A DNA stretch of 64,000 nucleotides, taken from contig NC_092353.1 of NCBI RefSeq assembly GCF_963676685.1, positions 37,324,001 to 37,388,000 on the forward strand, given 5' to 3'. The DNA is from Mytilus edulis. Taxonomy: Eukaryota. The translations under genes and the position numbers were made by a program. The notes under the pieces were generated by a model, which was not told where the DNA came from, searched no databases, and saw only the letters and a list, made by a program, of their open reading frames with translations. Of this stretch, positions 51,005-63,996 are shown piece after piece. Within the stretch, counting starts at the first letter, position 1. Each line of letters starts with the position of its first letter.

Positions 51005-51909
51005 TTTTTGTCAAGCCTGCAACTTTTGTTGCAGAAAGCTCGACATAGGGATAGTGATGTGGCGGCGGCGTTAGCTCACTTCTTAAAAGCTTTATATTTT
51101 AGAAGGATGAAGACCTGGATGCTTCATACTTTGTATATAGATGCTTCATGTTACGAAGTTTCCGTCAGTCACATGTCCAATGTCCTTGACCTCATTTTCA
51201 TGGTTCAGTGACCACTTGGAAAAAAAGTTCACATTTTTTGTAATGTTGAATTCTCTCTTATTATAAGTAATAGGATAACTATATTTGATATGTGCGTACC
51301 TTGCAAGGTCCTCGTGTCTGTCAGACAGTTTTCACTTGACCTCGACCTCATTTCATGGATCAGTGAACAAGGTTAAGTTTTGGTGGTCAAGTCCATATCT
51401 CAGATACTATAAGCAATAGGGCTAGTATATTCGGTGTATGGAAGGACTGTAAGGTGTACATGTCCAACTGGCAGGTGTCATCTGACCTTGACCTCATTTT
51501 CATGGTTCAGTGGTTATAGTGAAATTTTTGTGTTTTGGTCTGTTTTTCTCATACTATAGGCAATAGGTCTACTATATTTGTTGTATGGAATGATCGTAAG
51601 GTGTACATGTCTAGCGGGCAGATGTCATGTGACCTTGACCTCATTTTCATGGTTTAGTGGTCAAAGTTAAGTTTTTGAGTTTTGGTCTTTTTATCTAATA
51701 CTATATGCCATAGGTCAACTATATTTGGTGTATGGAAATATTTTATGATCTTCATGTCAGTCGAGCAGGTTTTATTGGACCGTGACATCATTTTCATGGT
51801 TCAATGCACAGTGTTAAAGTTTTTGCGTTTTGGTCTTATTTTTCTTAAACTATAAGTAATGGGTCAACTATTTAATATGTTGTATAGAAGCATTGTTAGC
51901 TGTACATGT
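51005..51909 (+). mobile_element. HINE-like element with ~147-bp internal tandem units, 3' truncated
   Basis: 5' palindrome ctgcaacttttgttgcag, (GGC)n, and gaccttgacctcattttcatgg repeated at ~51183, 51338, 51484, 51631 and 51778. Confidence 0.75.
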
Positions 51910-52204
51910 TTTTCCAACTTTGTGCGAAACGAATTCGGAACTATTCAGCGAGCATGGTTTTAAAATACACTCCTGGTCAGCACTTTTATTAGTTTTAATG
52001 GTAACAGTCATTTTTGAGTTTGGCGGAACTGTGATGGTTTGTTTTATGCAAACTTGCTGAGTTGAAATTTCGTTTCCACTGTTAACAAATGTCTCATTTG
52101 TCACTTTATTGTTGATGGTAATTTTGGGAGTACTCGGGTTTATCACTGCGCTCAGTGTGTCCGAAATTTAGCCTAAGTATAACATAGTCTGTTAATGGCT
52201 CTTT
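51910..52204 (-). pseudogene. Decayed Gypsy-like pol fragment (protease C-end and post-protease linker)
   Basis: Minus strand reads KEPLTDYVILRLNF (ILGxDF-like), then after a frameshift DTLSAVINPSTPKITINNK...QTITVPPNSKMTV. Continuous with 56137-56668. Confidence 0.7.
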
Positions 52205-55200
52205 CACTGTGTCTAAACCACGCCGGCAAAATTTGCTCGGACTCGATGCTATCTAACATCCGGCACAATGACGGAACACCAATAGACAAAAGAAAGGTAG
52301 GTTTCTCCTTATTGTTTTATTCTTTTTATGATATCGAAGAATATATATACATATACAACTATTTTCTATTGTGAGATGCAATATTTTCTAAAACCGTTCT
52401 CTATTAACGGAGAAATAAGTCAAAATGCATGTCAAAATGACGAATTGAGTGAACCTTGCCTCGTAATTGTTTAATTTCTCGTTAAATTGTTCACATTGTA
52501 CGGAAAGAAAGGTACGGGAAGATAGATATTGACACGGAGATTGCAAATTAAGTTATTATGAGCATCTCAATAATTGTAACTCTGTGTATGGAACGAAAGA
52601 AATGGGTCATGTCAAAATCGAACTGGCCGGTTGCGTCAATGTATACAACCCGGTTTCGTCATAGATTTCAAAATGCATAACCCGGTTTGGTCAAATAAAA
52701 AAAATCATAATCCCATTACATTAGAATTGATTATTTAACTTCAGCGTTCAAAAGGAGTTTTGTGGGTCGTTCGAAAACAAGTTCGTTCACCGGACAGCGG
52801 CTTATTATTTATATGAGTCTCAGATTCAAATAAATAATAAGCAAATTCATACTCTTATAGCCGACACATATATTTTAATTTTACTTTGCATTCCGAAATT
52901 TTTTAACAGCATATTGAGATTAAAGCTCTCTATATGAGTTATGGGAAAATATGATGAACATTTTTAAACTTGAAATTAAAGTTTACGGTCTTAAAAATCG
53001 AAACACACAATTGATATGTGATTTTCTCGCACAAAAGAATGGACACCTTTATAAGTAATCTAATCATTCCATGTATGTAATCTTTTCTACCATCGTTAAA
53101 AATAAATAAAATTTATTTATCACTATACTGCTATGTACAAATTAGTTAAATAGTCTCAGGTCAGCGATACAATTCAATAATAATTATTTTGTTAACATTA
53201 TTAAAAAAAAACGAGTCTGCACTGTTGCCATTGTGTTATGATGATCGTACACTGATGTTGGTCAATATATTTTGACAATATATACGGACAGACGAATTCA
53301 GTTTATTTCAAAGTGGGCGTATTTCGAACAACTTGTACATACCGCCGAGCGTAGCGAGTCGAACAATATTTTGATTATTTTTTGCTTTACAAAATCTTTA
53401 AATACAGGAATCAATAAAGTTTTGGCAACCAAAGGTGGGGTCGGGGCGTGCAACATATACGTCATCTAGATTCGCCACTTACCTTATAAAGTGTATACCG
53501 AATTAAAATATTGTAAGAAATGAGAAAACAGGGACACCCGGGAAATCGGATTATGTCAGTTGGATTATGTTTCTCATAATAAATGCCGAATATCAAGTTC
53601 TTTTTATCGATTTCTATACATTTTTTTTTTCAAATATATATAAAAGTTTTATGTGAAAATGATAAGGCAGACAAATATACAAATAAATCGACTTGGCCGA
53701 TATTCTGATAAAAATTATTGACCTTTAATTACGATTTTTTTCTCCATTTCTCATTCCGCGTTTTTACACGCCCGTCCCAATTTTGACAGGCCGTATTATT
53801 GTATACACCCGTCTAACCGTCCGTCCTTCCATCCGTCTGTTCCTCCATCTATCAGTCATTCTGTCCGTCCGTCCGTCCGTCTATCTATCCTTCTGTCCAC
53901 CATAAACATGTCGCACCGTAACTTCAGGACAGCTTATCTTATTTTCTTAAAAAAACATGATCTGTAAACCTTTTAGTGAAAATCAAATTAAATCTTTTTG
54001 AGTTACAGAACATGTAAGTGAAACAGGAATGTGGGGTTTTTTAACATGTCGCGCCATATCTCAAAAACGAAGTATTATAACTGCATAAAACTTTATACAC
54101 TTCTTAGTTATATAAATACTATAAACTTCTGTTTATTTTTTGGTGATGTTTAAAATTTTGGTTTAGAGGGATTGAATTTTTTTTGGTAAAACAAAAACAA
54201 AGGGGGGGGGGGGGGCATTTAAACATGAAAAATTGATACAAATTACAAGCGACAACAACCCGACCATAGAGCAGAAAACAGCCGAAGGCCACAATGGGTC
54301 TTCAATGAAGCGAGAAACTCCCGCATCCGGTGGTGTCCTTTAGCTGGCCCCTTAATTAATATGTATACTAGTTCAGTGATAGTGGATTTCATAGTAAACT
54401 GCGAATACATGTATATTTATCATTTTTAATGGATAATTTTAACTATGATACAAGTTTTGGCACAAATCGCGAATTTACTATAAAGGCTCTGTCATAGGAC
54501 GAGTTAAGGTTTATTCATCATTTTTTATTATTTGTACTTTTGTTGTACTGTTTGTGTCAGCGACAACACTTTGACTCAGTCCATTTCCCGAGTCACAGGC
54601 TTGTAATTCCATGGTTGTCTTTGGTTGCTTTGTACCATATGTGTTTTGAACATAACATAGGCAGGTAGTTTTTTTGTTTGAATTGTTTTACATTTATAAT
54701 TTAGGGCCCTGTTATAGCTTGCTTTCATGCGGTTTGTGTGTTTTTCTCATTGTTTAAGGCATACGGTGACCTAAACTTGATTAATTCAACATCATTTTTG
54801 TGTCTAAAAGAAAGTTGTCTCATTGTCAATGTGTATGGGATAAGTGGTTACCGTCACTTTTTCTAAATAAGACCTAGATATAATTATAAATGACGGTCAT
54901 GTTTTGCAAACCAACTTTTATTCACATTGAAAATACAATACTGTCAGATATTGTTTTCGAAAGTTATCTTGAAGTTTCAATTGAATTCGAACTGTAAAAA
55001 AGATGAATTTGAAATGTAAAAAAAAATGAATTTGAACTGTAAAAATAATGTGAAAAAAATGCCTATAGGAAAATAAATGTGCCTACCAGAAACGGGGAGA
55101 AAGTTACAAATCTCATTGCTATGTTATGGATGCTTAAGTGTGAAAACTTGCTTTAGTGCGCAAGGAACACAGTATATATAGTACCAGAAAATGTGGCAGG

Positions 55201-56136
55201 ACTGCATGCATGATAAACTTGTGCAGAACAGTAAAGACTATAGTCGGTTTGGGACTGTTCGTCAATGATTGAATGCATAGTGTATATAATTTAGTATAGT
55301 AAATTAAAATTATGGCACAATCAAAACACATACTTTTATTTTTCATCTTTACATACTACTATTATAAACGAAGAAAATATAATAATGTTACAAATAGTTA
55401 GATACCAGTGTTTGCTATTGAGTATTTATATTCCATTTAAAATTAGTTTGAAGTTAAGTGAAATAAGGGATACGCCTTTCACTAGAAAATGTGTATTATC
55501 ATAATTAACTATGTCCAAAAGTGCCTGTTTTAAATAGATTTTAACACGCCAAGTTTACCTTACAATAAATATATATTTAAATTCTCGAAATACAATGTTC
55601 AGACCCCTGCCAAAGTTGCTTTTCATAAATTGTTTGTTAAAAAAACCAACCAAACCGGGTGATATATATAGACGAAACCGGGTGATTGTGTAGTAACAAC
55701 ATTGACGAAACCGGTTTATTTTAATTTGACATGACCCATTTCTTTCGTTCCATACACAGAGATACAAATAATGAGATGCTCATAATAACTTCATTTGCAA
55801 TCTCTGTGTCAATATCTATCTTCCCGTACATTTCTTTCCGTACAATGTGAACGATTTAACGAGAAATTAAACAATTTCGAGGCAAGGTTCACTCAATTCG
55901 TCATTTTGACATGCATTTTGACTTATTTCTCCGTTAATAGAGAACGGTTGTAGAAAATATTGCATCTCACAATAGAAAATAGTTGTATATGTATATATAT
56001 TCTTCGATATCATAAAAAGAATAAAACAATGAGGAGAAACCTACCTTTCTTTTGTCTATTGGTGTTCCGTCATTGTGCCGGATGTTAGATAGCATCGAGT
56101 CCGAGCAAATTTTGCCGGTGTGGTTTAGACACAGTG
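52205..56136. mobile_element. Non-autonomous Transib/RAG-like DNA transposon with long TIRs
   Basis: 412-bp TIRs (52205-52616 / 55725-56136, ~11 mismatches by eye), termini CACTGTG...CACAGTG, 5-bp TSD TCTTT. No transposase ORF is visible; superfamily inferred from termini and TSD only. Confidence 0.8.
53761..54190 (+). mobile_element. HINE-like fragment nested in the long-TIR element
   Basis: tttttacacgcccgtc start followed by a (CCGT)n microsatellite and partly repeated core. Confidence 0.55.
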
Positions 56137-56668
56137 TCTTTGCACACATCCCATTGTATGTTTACTCTATTAATGTCGAGAGTCGTTCCATGTTTATAAT
56201 CTACCCAATAACAAGCTGTTAACCCAAACTACGTAGCGTTACGTTCTCCAAATCTCCATTTTCTGCCGGAATTAATTTCTCATATACTAATGTTATCATT
56301 GCAGCAGTGTCCACAATCATTCTCACATTCTGGTCATGTATAGTACCTCGTTGTCGCTAATTAGTGAGACCGTGATTAGGTGATGTTTCATGACCAATAG
56401 ACTTTGGAATCGTGCGTTGGCCTACTGACCTGAGCCTTTGTTGTTTAAAGACCCCATTGTTGGGGTTTCACTTTGATTTACTCCGTATCCTGGTTGTCTG
56501 AAATAACCGAGATTTCTGGAGTTTGTCCGAGGAGATGCTATCCGTTGTCTTTAGGGACTATATGATCTCTAGCTTAGTGGGGGATGTTGTTTATCGATAG
56601 GCATTAAGCTTGGGTGTATTTCTATCTGGCGATCTATTGCATTGCCAGGGATCTCCATGGCCTGTTTA
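56137..56668 (-). pseudogene. Decayed Gypsy-like gag-end/aspartic protease fragment
   Basis: Minus strand: RGTIHDQNVRMIVDTAAMITLV (DT[G/A] active site), with stops and a frameshift, then IQWDVCK. An upstream RS/SP-rich frame ends T TTA AAC...LNNKGSGQ*. Confidence 0.72.
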
Positions 56669-56772
56669 GAGATGGCGCCCCACCATCGTTCAAATGTCTT
56701 GCGCCATCGTCAAATGACCCGCGCAATCGTTAAATTGTCTTCCGCCATCGTTCAAACTGATATCATTTTTAT

Positions 56773-57368
56773 GGGAGATATCCATTTGCGCCAAAACTGC
56801 GTCCTTTTACGCCACAATTGTTTTTCTCCAATTCTACGTTTGCGCCACCTGTTTTAAAATTATATGGTATCATTTGCGCCAAAAATAAAACATACGATTG
56901 CGCCAATTAGAAGAAAAATGACTTCCCTGCTCCTTTATTCGGACTTGGAATCGGAAGTTTACATGTAAAATGTTTACTTTTCTGAAAAATGCTTTCTTCT
57001 TACTGCTGCTGCATGGGTACTTCAAATTCAATGTATGTAGTAGCGTGTAACTTCCCTTTATTGTCCAAAAAAGACGATCATTAAAGATGAAAACAGTTCA
57101 TACTGATAATTACTGTAGAATGCCGCTCCGCTCTATTACTGGTACGTCTTGCAGTAGATGGAGTTTCAGCCCATACGGATGGTGAAATATCTCCGAACAA
57201 ATATGATATTTTTTAAGCAAAAATAAGAATATATAGATAGATATGTGTACAGGTAAATTGGCGCAAATGAGTTCCGAAAATTGGCGCAATCAGTATGCAT
57301 TTGGAAAACAAAATTTGGCGCAAATGATACCCCTGAAAAACAGTAATTGGCGCAAAAGGACTGCTGCC
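56773..57368. mobile_element. Non-autonomous DNA transposon with 8-9 bp TSD (Merlin- or MULE-like)
   Basis: (C)ATTTTTAT flanks both ends; GG...CC termini; TTGCGCCA repeats on the left are mirrored by TGGCGCAA on the right. Confidence 0.7.
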
Positions 57369-61720: not shown

Positions 61721-62413
61721 ATTTCTCGTGCTAGCAACATCAGCCGAGATGAACTTTTACAATATAAAGTCAAAAAGGTCAACAGGAGGGTGCCTTTTGT
61801 GTTGACTTACCATCCAAAATTTGACAACTTGTCTCACCTTATCCGCGAAAGTTGGAAAGATATCGAAAAACATCCTAAACTATCCAAGATCTTTCCCGAG
61901 CCACCTGTACTGGCTTTCCGCAGGCCCAAAAGCCTTAAAGACTTGCTGGTGAGAGCTGAGTTATCCTCTCAAGCAGGTTCTTCGTCAGTGGGCTCTTGTA
62001 AGGGTTGTGGAAACAAACGATGTCTGACTTGCAAACAAATACTGGATACCCAGACTTTTAACAGTCACTCCACTGGTACAGAATACACCATATTTTGCAA
62101 TGTTAATTGCAAGACTACAAATGTTGTGTATCTCCTACAGTGTAAATGTGGTAAACAGTATGTAGGCGAGTCAGAACAACCGTTTCACAAACGAATGAAC
62201 GGTCATCGTAGTGACTACCAATGCAAGCCAGACCTCCCTCTTAGTCGACATTTGAGATCCCCTGGCCACACTAAGTCAGATCTCAATCGACTGACCATTA
62301 CTATCATTGACCACAACTCTGCTTGGTCTAGGGAGGATAGACTTACTCGGGAAAGATTTTGGATAAGAAAATTAACAACTTTGGCACCAAATGGGATAAA
62401 TGAAAAGATGTAG
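61721..62413 (+). mobile_element. Penelope-like retroelement (Neptune-type), 5' truncated: linker and GIY-YIG endonuclease
   Basis: Open frame with PFVLTYHP, AFRRPKSLKDLLV, Cys-rich CKGCGNKRCLTC, and NVVY...YVGE...R..H...RE..WI..L.TLAPNGIN. Confidence 0.92.
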
Positions 62414-62937
62414 TTCGACACCATGCAGTGCTTCACATCTGGGTTATATTACTTATTATTACAGTCTCCGTTTCTATTTCTTTACCTTACTCGTCTCTAA
62501 AATAAATCTGTTGAATATAACAATTTAAATTGCTTAATTTTTTTAGGGATGTATAAGTACCAAGCCACGTCCAACTATTTTACTTTAGTCAAAATTTGTT
62601 ATTATATTTTAACGACCATTTGTTTTAAACATCGCAGACTTTAATGTAACTACACTACAGTTGTCAAATCTGAAATATTTAGAAATTTAAACCGTTCAGT
62701 GCTGTTTATTTGGAATTCTTATTGACGCAATCTTTCTTGTAACATCATAAAAATTGTGCTAGTTCACATCGCACATTATTATTTTTATTTAAAGCATATA
62801 TTTGAACTCTCTGATGTAATTAGTCTTATAACCTATGTCATATTCAACAAATTTTTTAGAATGGTGCAAGCGTCTTAACTGATGTTCGGTTTGCCTTTTT
62901 TATTGTATATTTCAAGATTTAGTAAAAGTTTAACTAA

Positions 62938-63996
62938 GAAGACTTAAAGATGATTCATTTCTTGAACACTGTAACTCTTTCCACCATTCAATAAAATTTA
63001 CATATGAATCATCTATGGAGAAAATAAACTTCCTCGATACTACGAGTTACATCAAGAACGGAACCATTATAATGGACCTCCATACCAAACAAACGGACAA
63101 ACATCAATTCCTTTCTCCTAAAAGTAGCCATCCTAAACACTGCTCCCGTGGTATCCCATTCAGCCAGGCATTGCGAATCAAGAGAATATGCTCTACTGAA
63201 AATACGAAAAATGCTAGACTTGGACAACTTCGTAAACATCTAGTTGTTCGAGGATACAATAACAACATCATTGATAGCGCTTTCGAAAGAGCAAACAAAA
63301 CTAGTCGCCAAGAACTTCTTGAGTACAAAGATAAGAATAAAGCAGCTAACAGAACACCCCTTGTACTCACTTACCATCCTGATTTTAAAAATGTGTCATC
63401 CATTGTTCAGAAGCATTGGAAAATTATAGAAAATGATTTAAATCTAAAAAAAAGTATTTTCATCACCACCAGTCATGGCCTTCAGAAGACCTAAAAACAT
63501 CCGTGACAAATTAGTGACATCTGTATGAGCAAAGCAGCCTAATCCATCGCCCGGTTGCTACAAACAATGTGGTCGAAGGAATTGTTTGTGTTGTAAAGCT
63601 GCCAATACAAGCAGTTCTTTCATCAGCTCCGTTACTAAACAAAATTATACCATCTACTCTAATTCCAACTGTAAAACGGAGAACTCAATTTATATATTAA
63701 CATGTGACACTTGTGGCATTCAGTATGTGGGAGAACCAATGGACAAATTTAATATTCGGCTCAATAACCATCGTTCATCGTACAAAACCAACAAAAACTG
63801 TCCCCTCACAAGACATCTTCGTTCAACGAAACATCCTTTTGATAATGTTACTTTCCAAATTATAGAAGTTAACACCGAGTGGGACACCACGGCGAGAAGG
63901 AGAAGAGAAAATTTTTGGATCCACCAACTCCACACTTTAGAACCTGATGGTCTTAACGAAAAAGACGAAAAAAGATACAGGAAAGATAAAGAATAA
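62938..63996 (+). mobile_element. Second, divergent Penelope-like element (RT C-end/thumb and GIY-YIG), disrupted
   Basis: NSFHHSIKFTYE..INFLD, SSHPKHCSRGIPFSQALRIKRICS, PLVLTYHP; frameshift at an A run (~63450) and TGA at ~63526; then SIY...YVGE, RENFWI, EPDGLN. Confidence 0.92.

What the first reader, a model, noticed from the sequence alone, without database searches (positions are those of the whole stretch)
52200..56141. 3.9 kb transposon with RSS-heptamer ends, 5-bp TSD and 412-bp TIRs (Transib/RAG-like)
Seen: the left end starts CACTGTG and the right end finishes CACAGTG; read inward, each end is one mismatch from the canonical RSS heptamer CACAGTG. The flanks match as a 5-bp TSD (TCTTT); 2-, 3- and 4-bp TSDs do not match, which argues against CACTA/EnSpm or Chapaev. 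The TIRs are ~97% identical over 412 bp, then decay into AACCGG/CCGGTT subterminal repeats. Established: CAC termini plus a 5-bp TSD mark Transib and RAG-like transposons, the ancestors of the V(D)J recombinase, and their TIRs are normally only tens of bp. Inference: this is a non-autonomous member of a fairly recently active Transib/RAGL family with unusually long TIRs. The A-rich motif GCAAAATTT lies 14 nt from the heptamer, so there is no 12/23 spacing.
Basis: partly seen in the sequence, partly recalled or inferred. Interest (0 to 1): 0.8.

Follow-up and report, generated by a model that had tools for sequence, protein, structure and literature searches.

The report
Gene-less Transib-type transposon in mussel
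This is one copy of a young, gene-less cut-and-paste transposon family (several hundred copies in a Mytilus mussel genome). Its ends and 5-bp footprint are those of the Transib/RAG group, and the same genome encodes intact RAG1-shaped transposases, but none could be tied to this family.

Summary
Window 52205-56136 is a 3,932-bp element with 438-nt terminal inverted repeats (TIRs, 96% matched), ends CACTGTG...CACAGTG, and a TCTTT target-site duplication (TSD).

It is one of at least 260 copies: 526 termini match the 32-mer, against 0 for the control. Copies share the whole non-coding body at 91-97%. Homology stops exactly at CAC. 14 of 15 complete copies have a perfect 5-bp TSD. Insertion sites read C|DNNNH|G.

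No family copy carries a transposase. All 11 long copies (5.5-15.8 kb) were checked at least in part and hold unrelated nested insertions.

One nested unit gave a new result. It holds an intact 865-aa ORF (three 99-100% copies, plus several diverged lineages with 808-835-aa open frames) that Pfam does not recognise. Its profile hits amphioxus RAG1L (E 4e-6), and its model matches RAG1, BbRAGL and HzTransib (Foldseek E 1e-13 to 1e-8). So the genome has RAG1-fold transposases, but their one readable end shows no significant similarity to this family's.

Verdict: a non-autonomous, recently active element, very likely Transib-type. The mobilising enzyme is unproven.

The scan has noted the same kind of element many times elsewhere in this genome.

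The parts
52200..52204 (.). Left copy of the 5-bp target-site duplication, TCTTT
   Evidence: Identical to 56137-56141. 14 of 15 complete family copies have a perfect 5-bp TSD.
52205..52642 (+). Left terminal inverted repeat, 438 nt, starting CACTGTGTCTAAACC
   Evidence: the repeat finder pair I1, 96% complementary to 55699-56136. The arm hits the genome at 97-98% identity. Homology to other copies begins exactly at 52205.
52627..52693 (+). Left subterminal direct repeats: three CCGGTT(G/T)CGTCA / ACCCGGTTTCGTCA / ACCCGGTTTGGTCA motifs at the inner edge of the TIR. Presumed extra transposase-binding sites (inference).
   Evidence: the repeat finder D14, I2, I4 and I5. Conserved in other copies.
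52643..55698 (.). Non-coding body shared by the family. It includes a CCGT-rich microsatellite at 53809-53898, a fragment of a common mussel short repeat near 54220-54350, and 22-23-bp tandem repeats at 54982-55050.
   Evidence: No ORF over 70 aa. Colinear at 91-97% with eight other full copies, differing by internal insertions and deletions. Tandem repeats. The 54165-54355 bin has very high depth in all runs.
55645..55720 (-). Right subterminal direct repeats, the mirror of the left set
   Evidence: the repeat finder D11, I2, I4 and I5; alignment of the arms.
55699..56136 (-). Right terminal inverted repeat, 438 nt, ending GGTTTAGACACAGTG
   Evidence: the repeat finder I1. Its terminus equals the family's majority 32-mer.
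56137..56141 (.). Right copy of the 5-bp target-site duplication, TCTTT

Best explanation
The element is a non-autonomous cut-and-paste DNA transposon of the Transib / RAG-like type.

Proposed mechanism:
- It codes for nothing and is moved in trans by a RAG1-fold DDE transposase made elsewhere in the genome.
- The enzyme pairs the two identical ends and cuts exactly at the CAC borders.
- By analogy with RAG and HzTransib, this is a nick followed by a hairpin on the flanking DNA.
- The blunt-ended element then inserts with a 5-bp stagger, preferentially at C|DNNNH|G sites, giving the 5-bp duplication.
- The 438-bp arms and the CCGGTTT repeats at their inner edges would supply extra binding or pairing sites.

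Shown here: the exact termini, the 5-bp TSD, the target pattern, the copy number and youth of the family, the lack of coding capacity, and the presence of intact RAG1-fold transposase genes in this genome.

Inferred: which enzyme moves this family, the chemistry of the reaction, and the role of the long arms.
For: - Ends and TSD in the window.
- 526 termini genome-wide against 0 for the control.
- 118 exact-majority termini preceded by A and 112 preceded by T.
- Homology stops exactly at CAC in 29 loci.
- 14 of 15 complete copies have a perfect 5-bp TSD.
- A second family in the same genome, ending CACGGTG, has a 5-bp TSD (ATTGT) and sits nested in copy L041.
- Target pattern from 47 termini: C at -6 in 22, no C at -5, G once at -1. 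This resembles cCASTGg of Transib-N1_AG (PMC1131882).
- The third base of the terminus is C, as in RSS and Transib. In the 22 hAT families compared in that paper it is always G (PMC1131882).
- 5'-CA..TG-3' ends with 2-5-bp TSDs mark the clade of EnSpm, Mirage, Chapaev and Transib, within which 5 bp is the Transib value (PMC12730594; PMC1131882).
- The genome holds an intact 865-aa ORF in three 99-100% identical copies, plus diverged lineages with 808-835-aa open frames.
- The profile of that ORF family hits BbRAG1L at E 3.8e-6 and vertebrate RAG1 at 3e-4 to 1e-3, across the second D, CxxC, HxxxxH and E motifs.
- Its AlphaFold model matches RAG1 (E 6.5e-14), BbRAGL (3.3e-10) and HzTransib (1.7e-8). 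The next fold, Hermes, scores 2.2e-4.
- That ORF's carrier unit appears to have a 5-bp TSD, CTACA.
Against: - No copy with this family's termini carries a transposase. Among 77 pairs with exact termini, all 11 of 5.5-15.8 kb were read at least in part. They hold LINE, Penelope-like and tyrosine-recombinase elements, unrelated repeats, or a foreign DNA transposon.
- The RAG1-fold element's left end (CATTGTCAAG..., or CACATTG if it starts 2 nt earlier) is not significantly similar to the family terminus. No family termini appear near its C4 or C6 copy in the lists; the C4 check is complete to within 2 mismatches, while C6 was checked only for exact A- or T-prefixed termini.
- No other family shares even the first 13 nt of the terminus: 19 hits against 41 for the control.
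- The Pfam RAG1 model finds nothing in the genome. This is weak evidence, because the model also misses the RAG1-fold ORF family entirely.
- There is no nonamer-like block at 12 or 23 nt, and no asymmetry between the arms.
- TSDs are AT-rich (24% GC), whereas Transib and RAG are reported to prefer GC-rich targets (PMC1131882).
- TIRs of 438 bp are about ten times the usual Transib length.
Confidence: 0.68

Rival explanations
1. It is a non-autonomous member of another CAC-ended lineage of the EnSpm-Mirage-Chapaev-Transib clade (EnSpm/CACTA- or Chapaev-like). Its transposase in this mussel happens to make 5-bp rather than 2-4-bp duplications.
For: - The clade shares 5'-CA..TG-3' ends and makes 2-5-bp TSDs (PMC12730594).
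- Long arms with subterminal repeats are more typical of CACTA elements than of Transib (own knowledge).
- No Transib-type nonamer block is present.
Against: - 14 of 15 TSDs are exactly 5 bp, a length assigned to Transib within the clade (PMC1131882; PMC12730594).
- No EnSpm- or Chapaev-type transposase was linked to these ends. I did not search for one.
Confidence: 0.14
2. It is a non-autonomous hAT5 element, from the hAT lineage that makes 5-bp TSDs.
For: hAT5 is a described group of animal hAT elements with 5-bp TSDs (Kapitonov and Jurka 2007, cited in PMC12730594). hAT elements are reported as abundant in bivalves (PMC10294476).
Against: - The third terminal base is C. It is always G in the 22 hAT families compared in PMC1131882.
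- The ends read CAC...GTG.
- No hAT transposase was linked to these ends (not tested).
Confidence: 0.07
3. It is an orphan family. The enzyme that spread it is no longer in this assembly (lost, or present only in other individuals), so the copies are fossils whatever the superfamily.
For: No autonomous copy turned up among 77 exact-ended pairs or among the 40 best arm matches. No relative shares the terminal 13-mer.
Against: - Many termini are identical over 32 nt (230 counted), and the sampled copies are about 2% diverged, which points to recent activity.
- The listings stop at contig 12 and cover only exact termini preceded by A or T.
- Intact RAG1-fold ORFs exist in the genome.
Confidence: 0.25
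4. It is a single-copy inverted duplication or an assembly artefact, not a transposon.
For: None.
Against: - Hundreds of dispersed copies on all large contigs, with unrelated flanks and their own TSDs.
- Contigs from public runs of four organism labels lie on the element.
- A copy is present in a marine metagenome contig.
Confidence: 0

Closest known systems
Non-autonomous Transib families (e.g. Transib-N1_AG, Transib-N2_AG, TransibN1_SP; Kapitonov and Jurka 2005, PMC1131882)
   Same: Gene-less elements with CAC...GTG heptamer-like ends, a strict 5-bp TSD, and a target flanked by c...g (cCASTGg in Transib-N1_AG). They are far more numerous than their autonomous partners.
   Different: - TIRs are 438 bp instead of about 38-60 bp.
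- There is no nonamer-like block at 23-nt (or 12-nt) spacing.
- TSDs are AT-rich rather than GC-rich.
- The partner transposase is not identified.
RAGL / ProtoRAG transposons of amphioxus, oysters and other mussels (Martin et al. 2020, PMC7204232)
   Same: CAC-initiated TIRs and 5-bp TSDs. Rare non-autonomous derivatives are reported in the pearl oyster Pinctada. The phylum is Mollusca.
   Different: - The protostome TIR consensus CACTWMCAAACKTYKBB matches only at CACT.
- No RAG1L detectable with the Pfam RAG1 model.
- RAG2L was not tested.
- Copy number here is in the hundreds, whereas RAGL non-autonomous elements are described as few.
HzTransib of Helicoverpa zea (PDB 6PQN, 6PQR, 6PQX)
   Same: The only Transib transposase with a solved mechanism. 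It has the RAG1-like fold that the mussel 865-aa ORF model matches (E 1.7e-8).
   Different: - The mussel ORF is closer in fold score to RAG1 than to HzTransib.
- It has a coiled-coil N-terminus and a SAP tail.
- It follows a chromodomain ORF.
- It is not shown to act on this family.
CACTA/EnSpm and Chapaev (CMC) elements
   Same: CAC ends; long or complex subterminal repeat regions.
   Different: TSDs of 2-4 bp, against exactly 5 bp here.
hAT5
   Same: 5-bp TSD.
   Different: hAT ends have G at the third position; here it is C.

Membership tests
Transib superfamily | 5-bp target-site duplication | tested here: met
   Window TCTTT. 14 of 15 complete copies are perfect and one has a single mismatch.
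Transib superfamily | Termini 5'-CAC...GTG-3' with a heptamer close to CACAATG / CACAGTG | tested here: met
   CACTGTG at both ends, one mismatch from CACAGTG. Invariant in all copies read.
Transib superfamily | Second conserved A-rich (nonamer-like) block about 23 nt (or 12 nt) from the heptamer | tested here: not met
   The only A-run (GCAAAATTT) is 14 nt from the heptamer and identical in both arms, so there is no 12/23-type asymmetry.
Transib superfamily | Preference for GC-rich targets, with family-specific sites such as cCASTGg | tested here: inconclusive
   TSDs are 24% GC against 32% in the flanks, which does not meet the GC-rich criterion. The flanking C(-6)...G(+6) pattern does resemble the published sites (PMC1131882).
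Transib superfamily | Mobilised by a Transib/RAG1-core transposase whose own element carries the same ends | tested here: inconclusive
   RAG1-fold transposase genes exist in the genome. None lies between this family's ends as its own cargo, and the one end I could read is not similar.
RAGL (RAG1L-RAG2L) transposons | Convergent RAG1L and RAG2L genes between the TIRs of the autonomous form | tested here: inconclusive
   The Pfam RAG1 model gives 0 candidates in the genome, but it also misses the RAG1-fold family found here. RAG2L was not searched. 4.1 kb downstream of the 865-aa ORF was sampled only by short probes.
RAGL (RAG1L-RAG2L) transposons | Protostome TIR consensus CACTWMCAAACKTYKBB | tested here: not met
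   CACTGTGTCTAAACCAC agrees only at CACT, and the AAAC block is displaced by 3 nt.
CMC (EnSpm/CACTA, Mirage, Chapaev) | TSD of 2-4 bp | tested here: not met
   5 bp in 15 of 15 copies, counting the one with a mismatch.
hAT5 | hAT-type termini (third base G) and a hAT transposase | tested here: not met
   The third base is C (criterion from PMC1131882). The transposase was not tested.
Academ (DUF6589 transposases) | TSD of 3-4 or 9-10 bp; DUF6589-type transposase sharing the ends | tested here: not met
   The genome has 104 DUF6589 hits, but none of the 20 loci shares DNA with the TIR. TSD lengths are from PMC10045372.

The most novel reading that the evidence does not exclude
Mytilus carries a live Transib-related system that has gone unnoticed. 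It would consist of several lineages of RAG1-fold transposases that Pfam does not recognise, each with a SAP tail and, in the one lineage read, a chromodomain ORF just upstream. One lineage has three 99-100% identical intact copies. Together these would mobilise many hundreds of young, long-TIR, gene-less CAC...GTG elements such as this one. That would make a common, tractable protostome a natural model of RAG-like transposition.
Probability: 0.35. Interest if true: 0.7.

Novelty: new member of a known kind. Interest (0 to 1): 0.5.

Why it matters
Transib and RAG-like transposons are the relatives of the enzyme that assembles antibody genes. Active examples outside insects and amphioxus are few. 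A survey of mollusc transposons found a single Transib transposase (PMC10294476). If these abundant, nearly identical mussel elements are moved by the RAG1-fold transposases found here, Mytilus would offer two things. First, a natural pairing of enzyme and substrate for testing how end recognition works without a 12/23-type signal and with very long arms. Second, a source of recent insertions for studying target choice. Taken alone, this single copy is an ordinary member of a large repeat family.

Tried and rejected
1. **RAG1 Pfam model (PF12940) on the whole genome:** 0 candidates. This later proved uninformative, because the model also misses the RAG1-fold family.
2. **P-element (PF12017) and zf-RAG1 (PF10426) models on the genome:** no hits.
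3. **DUF6589/Academ-like transposases,** a lead from earlier notes: 104 hits, but no DNA shared with the TIR and no CAC ends at the copy boundaries I could see.
4. **Long copies as candidate autonomous elements.**
   - L041-L044, L032, L034 and L070 hold unrelated nested elements or repeats. Among them are LINE reverse transcriptase, a Penelope-like element, a 1,418-aa ORF with a weak tyrosine-recombinase match, and a CACGGTG element.
   - L071 to L073 are family-like or unidentified sequence without ORFs.
5. **The 15.8-kb copy on contig 9.** It first looked autonomous, with perfect family ends, an AGTAA TSD and an 865-aa ORF. It is a non-autonomous copy that received a GGCC-ended MITE (3-bp TSD), and the MITE in turn received the ORF-bearing unit.
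6. **Relatives sharing the terminal 13-mer but differing further in:** none above chance. A 4-copy candidate proved to be internal to another repeat.
7. **C2H2 zinc-finger ORF in variant L045:** a captured gene fragment present in about five copies, not a transposase.
8. **Sampling copies through a 42-aa ORF inside the TIR in the protein database:** nothing on record.
9. **Reads.** Contigs of four runs laid on 51300-57000 gave mostly repeat noise. One contig bridges the left junction (filled site), and no empty site was recovered.
10. **Closed or exhausted tools.**
    - Known Transib protein sequences could not be used as queries, because no tool supplied one.
Full report
**Setting**

The window is contig 10, 37324001-37388000, of a 1.37-Gb genome with 14 large contigs and about 31% G+C. 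Database proteins 97-100% identical to ORFs met later are from Mytilus edulis and M. galloprovincialis, so this is a Mytilus mussel. Around the element lie a 147-bp satellite (51337-51909) and retroelement ORFs (61790-63996). No host gene is evident nearby.

**The observation**

- Sequence and repeat search confirm an inverted repeat of 438 nt, 96% matched, at 52205-52642 and 55699-56136.
- It starts CACTGTG and ends CACAGTG.
- It is flanked by TCTTT on both sides, and the duplication does not extend to a sixth base.
- Each arm ends inward in three ACCCGGTTT(C/G)GTC-type repeats.
- The two arms are nearly identical, with no difference between them that is fixed across copies in the first ~360 nt. 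The only A-run sits 14 nt from the heptamer in both. There is therefore nothing like a 12/23 pair.

**It is a transposon family**

- The left arm hits the genome at 97-98% identity over its full length. There were 898 first-look candidates, and all 40 that were scored were full-length.
- The 32-nt terminus occurs 262 times forward and 264 times reverse at up to 2 mismatches, against 0 for the reversed control.
- Of the termini identical to the family's majority 32-mer, 118 are preceded by A and 112 by T.
- In 29 other loci, similarity stops exactly at CAC and the flanks are unrelated.
- Eight further complete copies (3.3-4.8 kb) are colinear with the window copy over the whole body at 91-97%. 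They differ by internal deletions and insertions.
- 77 pairs with exact termini range from 537 to 15,832 bp, with a median of 3,435 bp.
- Thirty left ends average 2.3% from the majority state, and the window copy 0.9%. That sample was chosen as the best matches, so it is biased young.
- Contigs from public runs under four organism labels cover the element, and one bridges the window's left junction with a single mismatch.
- A marine metagenome contig holds another copy.

**Footprint and target**

The TSDs read in complete copies are:

| Copy | TSD |
|---|---|
| Window | TCTTT |
| 13 other copies | ACTAA, AACAC, ACTAT, AATAC, TACTT, AAACA, GAGTA, TTTAT, TTACT, TTCTT, TATGT, GGAAT, AGTAA |
| L041 | ATATA / ATAAA (one mismatch) |

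From 47 termini, the TSD is AT-rich (24% G+C). C stands at -6 in 22 of 47, C is absent at -5, and G appears once at -1. The target is therefore C|DNNNH|G.

Kapitonov and Jurka report cCASTGg and cCAWTGc for two mosquito Transib families, but GC-rich targets overall (PMC1131882).

A second family, ending CACGGTG, sits nested in copy L041 with its own 5-bp TSD (ATTGT). The hallmark is therefore shared by more than one family in this genome, as earlier notes of this scan also say.

**No coding capacity, and no autonomous copy found**

The window copy has no ORF over 70 aa. I looked for a coding relative in five ways.

1. *The 29 best arm matches.* All continue into the family body. Two that deviate carry a captured C2H2 zinc-finger fragment. 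That fragment is present in about five copies, and its two halves hit different other loci.
2. *All 11 exact-ended pairs of 5.5 kb or more.*
   - Seven hold identified unrelated material: LINE or Penelope-like reverse transcriptases, a 1,418-aa ORF with a weak tyrosine-recombinase match, unrelated repeats, or the CACGGTG element.
   - Three (L071, L072, L073; central 2.5-kb samples only) are family-like or unidentified sequence without ORFs.
   - The eleventh is the 15.8-kb copy on contig 9, described below.
3. *Elements that share the first 13 nt but differ further in.* None above chance.
4. *Genome scans with Pfam models.* RAG1, the P element and zf-RAG1 gave nothing.
5. *The DUF6589 (Academ-like) transposases raised by earlier notes.* There are 104 hits, but none shares DNA with the arms.

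**The contig 9 copy and a RAG1-fold transposase**

The pair 87810475-87826306 has exact family ends and a perfect AGTAA duplication. It contains an intact 865-codon open frame at 87815284-87817878, just downstream of a 167-aa ORF with a chromodomain.

The ORF is not the family's own cargo. Three nested layers can be told apart:
- The family sequence breaks at body position ~2060. There a MITE with GGCCTAAATT... ends and a 3-bp duplication (CCA) is inserted.
- Within that MITE, the ORF-bearing unit starts at 87812046. The contig 4 and contig 6 copies match the query from position 536 on at 99%, while hundreds of MITE copies match positions 1-535.
- The MITE resumes at CTACA|CCTGATTC. This restores a MITE of 1,148 bp, against 1,146-1,176 bp in most of the other MITE copies whose two ends I could pair (one is 1,319 bp). 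The ~11.6-kb unit therefore appears to be flanked by a 5-bp duplication, CTACA.

I could not check this last point against an intact MITE copy. The unit's right end shows no inverted repeat of its left end (CATTGTCAAG..., or CACATTG if shifted by 2 nt).

The ORF has these properties:
- It has three 99-100% identical intact copies, one broken copy, and several lineages at 36-50% identity, four of which keep uninterrupted 808-835-aa open frames.
- Pfam sees nothing in it except a SAP tail in some relatives, and no RAG1 match even at E 10.
- A profile of 15 relatives hits the amphioxus RAG1L chain 6B40_A at E 3.8e-6 over 281 positions. The alignment runs through GGDMKF (second D), CPWC, the PYMHxxxYH histidines and the following E. 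It also hits zebrafish and mouse RAG1.
- The AlphaFold model (840 aa, mean pLDDT 71, core blocks 80-94) gives Foldseek E-values of:

| Match | Foldseek E-value |
|---|---|
| RAG1 | 6.5e-14 |
| BbRAGL | 3.3e-10 |
| HzTransib | 1.7e-8 |
| Hermes (next fold) | 2.2e-4 |

- Relatives in the protein database are almost all from Mytilus species, with single ones from a sea star and a coral.

**What this means for the finding**

The features of the DNA itself point to the Transib/RAG-like group:
- CAC ends, with C at the third position.
- A strict 5-bp duplication.
- A c...g flanked target.

Within the clade of CA..TG-ended transposons, 5 bp is the Transib value (PMC12730594, PMC1131882). The genome demonstrably encodes RAG1-fold transposases that look recently active, and one of them seems to leave a 5-bp footprint.

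The link is circumstantial, for three reasons:
- The one transposase-bearing end I could read is not significantly similar to the family's terminus.
- None of the paralogue positions lies within a known family pair.

Rivals remain: a CMC-type lineage with an unusual footprint, hAT5, or a family whose enzyme is gone. Single-copy duplication is excluded.

**Comparison with what is known**

Non-autonomous Transib families and RAGL elements with CAC ends and 5-bp TSDs are well described, including RAGL in oysters and in the mussels Modiolus and Bathymodiolus (PMC7204232). This element differs in four ways:
- 438-bp arms.
- No second conserved block.
- AT-rich targets.
- High copy number.

A bivalve-wide survey found only one Transib transposase (PMC10294476). 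The RAG1-fold lineages seen here may therefore be under-reported because profile libraries miss them.

I file the element as a new member of a known kind, with membership probable but unproven.

**Earlier notes of this scan**

They describe the same kind of element many times in this genome: 26 notes mention Transib. One follow-up concluded that a CACGGTG family of about 500 gene-less copies exists. I saw one copy of such a family. None of the notes I could retrieve reports a RAG1-fold transposase.

Noticed in passing
G000 contig 9: 87815284-87817878 (+) (loci L091, L075, L074); copies at contig 4: 64741596 and contig 6: 26944447; broken copy at contig 1: 34181866-34183001: An intact 865-aa ORF that Pfam does not recognise. 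Its family profile hits amphioxus RAG1L (E 3.8e-6), and its predicted fold matches RAG1, BbRAGL and HzTransib (E 1e-13 to 1e-8). It has a SAP-like tail and follows a 167-aa chromodomain ORF. Diverged lineages lie at contig 9: 68532973 and 59380949, contig 7: 8415938, contig 2: 53287525 and contig 14: 31810851; the first four keep 808-835-aa open frames, the last has an internal stop. The carrier unit is about 11.6 kb, its left end reads CATTGTCAAG, and it probably has a 5-bp TSD (CTACA). The right end is unverified and shows no TIR.
   Followed up: partly
L078:162-696 and L079:51-663 (contig 9: 87811511-87812045 and 87823650-87824262): A high-copy MITE of about 1.15 kb with 40-bp TIRs starting GGCCTAAATTAAAATATTG and a 3-bp TSD (CCA here). 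There were 814 first-look candidates in the genome.
   Followed up: partly
L041:316-3421 (contig 1: 40552728-40555833): A 3,106-bp gene-less element of a second family with CACGGTG...CACCGTG ends, 64-bp TIRs and a 5-bp TSD (ATTGT), nested in a copy of the studied family.
   Followed up: partly
L045:944-2308 (contig 9: 36955354-36956718): A subfamily of about five copies carries a 1.37-kb segment with a 146-aa Krueppel-type C2H2 zinc-finger ORF on the minus strand. Its two halves hit different other loci (contig 11: 13803325 at 81%; contig 6: 60785289 at 74%), as if host gene fragments had been captured.
   Followed up: partly
G000 contig 8: 53807595, 53811829, 53816063: Three right termini of the family in the same orientation, exactly 4,234 bp apart. 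This looks like a tandem triplication of a copy with its flank.
   Followed up: no
G000 contig 6: 34651357-34651893 and contig 9: 27278645-27279494: Very short copies (537 and 850 bp) that can hold little more than partial arms.
   Followed up: no
L043:1031-5284: A 1,418-aa ORF with a weak tyrosine-recombinase (Phage_integrase) match, inside a 5.4-kb insertion with 167-bp inverted ends. It is probably a DIRS- or Crypton-like element.
   Followed up: no
G000, 104 places (loci L046-L065): Many DUF6589 (Academ-like) transposase ORFs. One has a PHD finger inserted in the core (L046) and one lies next to a helicase ORF (L065).
   Followed up: partly
window 51337-51909: A 147-bp tandem repeat of about 3.9 units at 77% identity, immediately left of the insertion. 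It has very high depth in all four public runs.
   Followed up: no
window 61790-63996: Three ORFs (207, 159 and 136 aa), two of them with GIY-YIG-like motifs. They are likely remains of Penelope-like retroelements.
   Followed up: no
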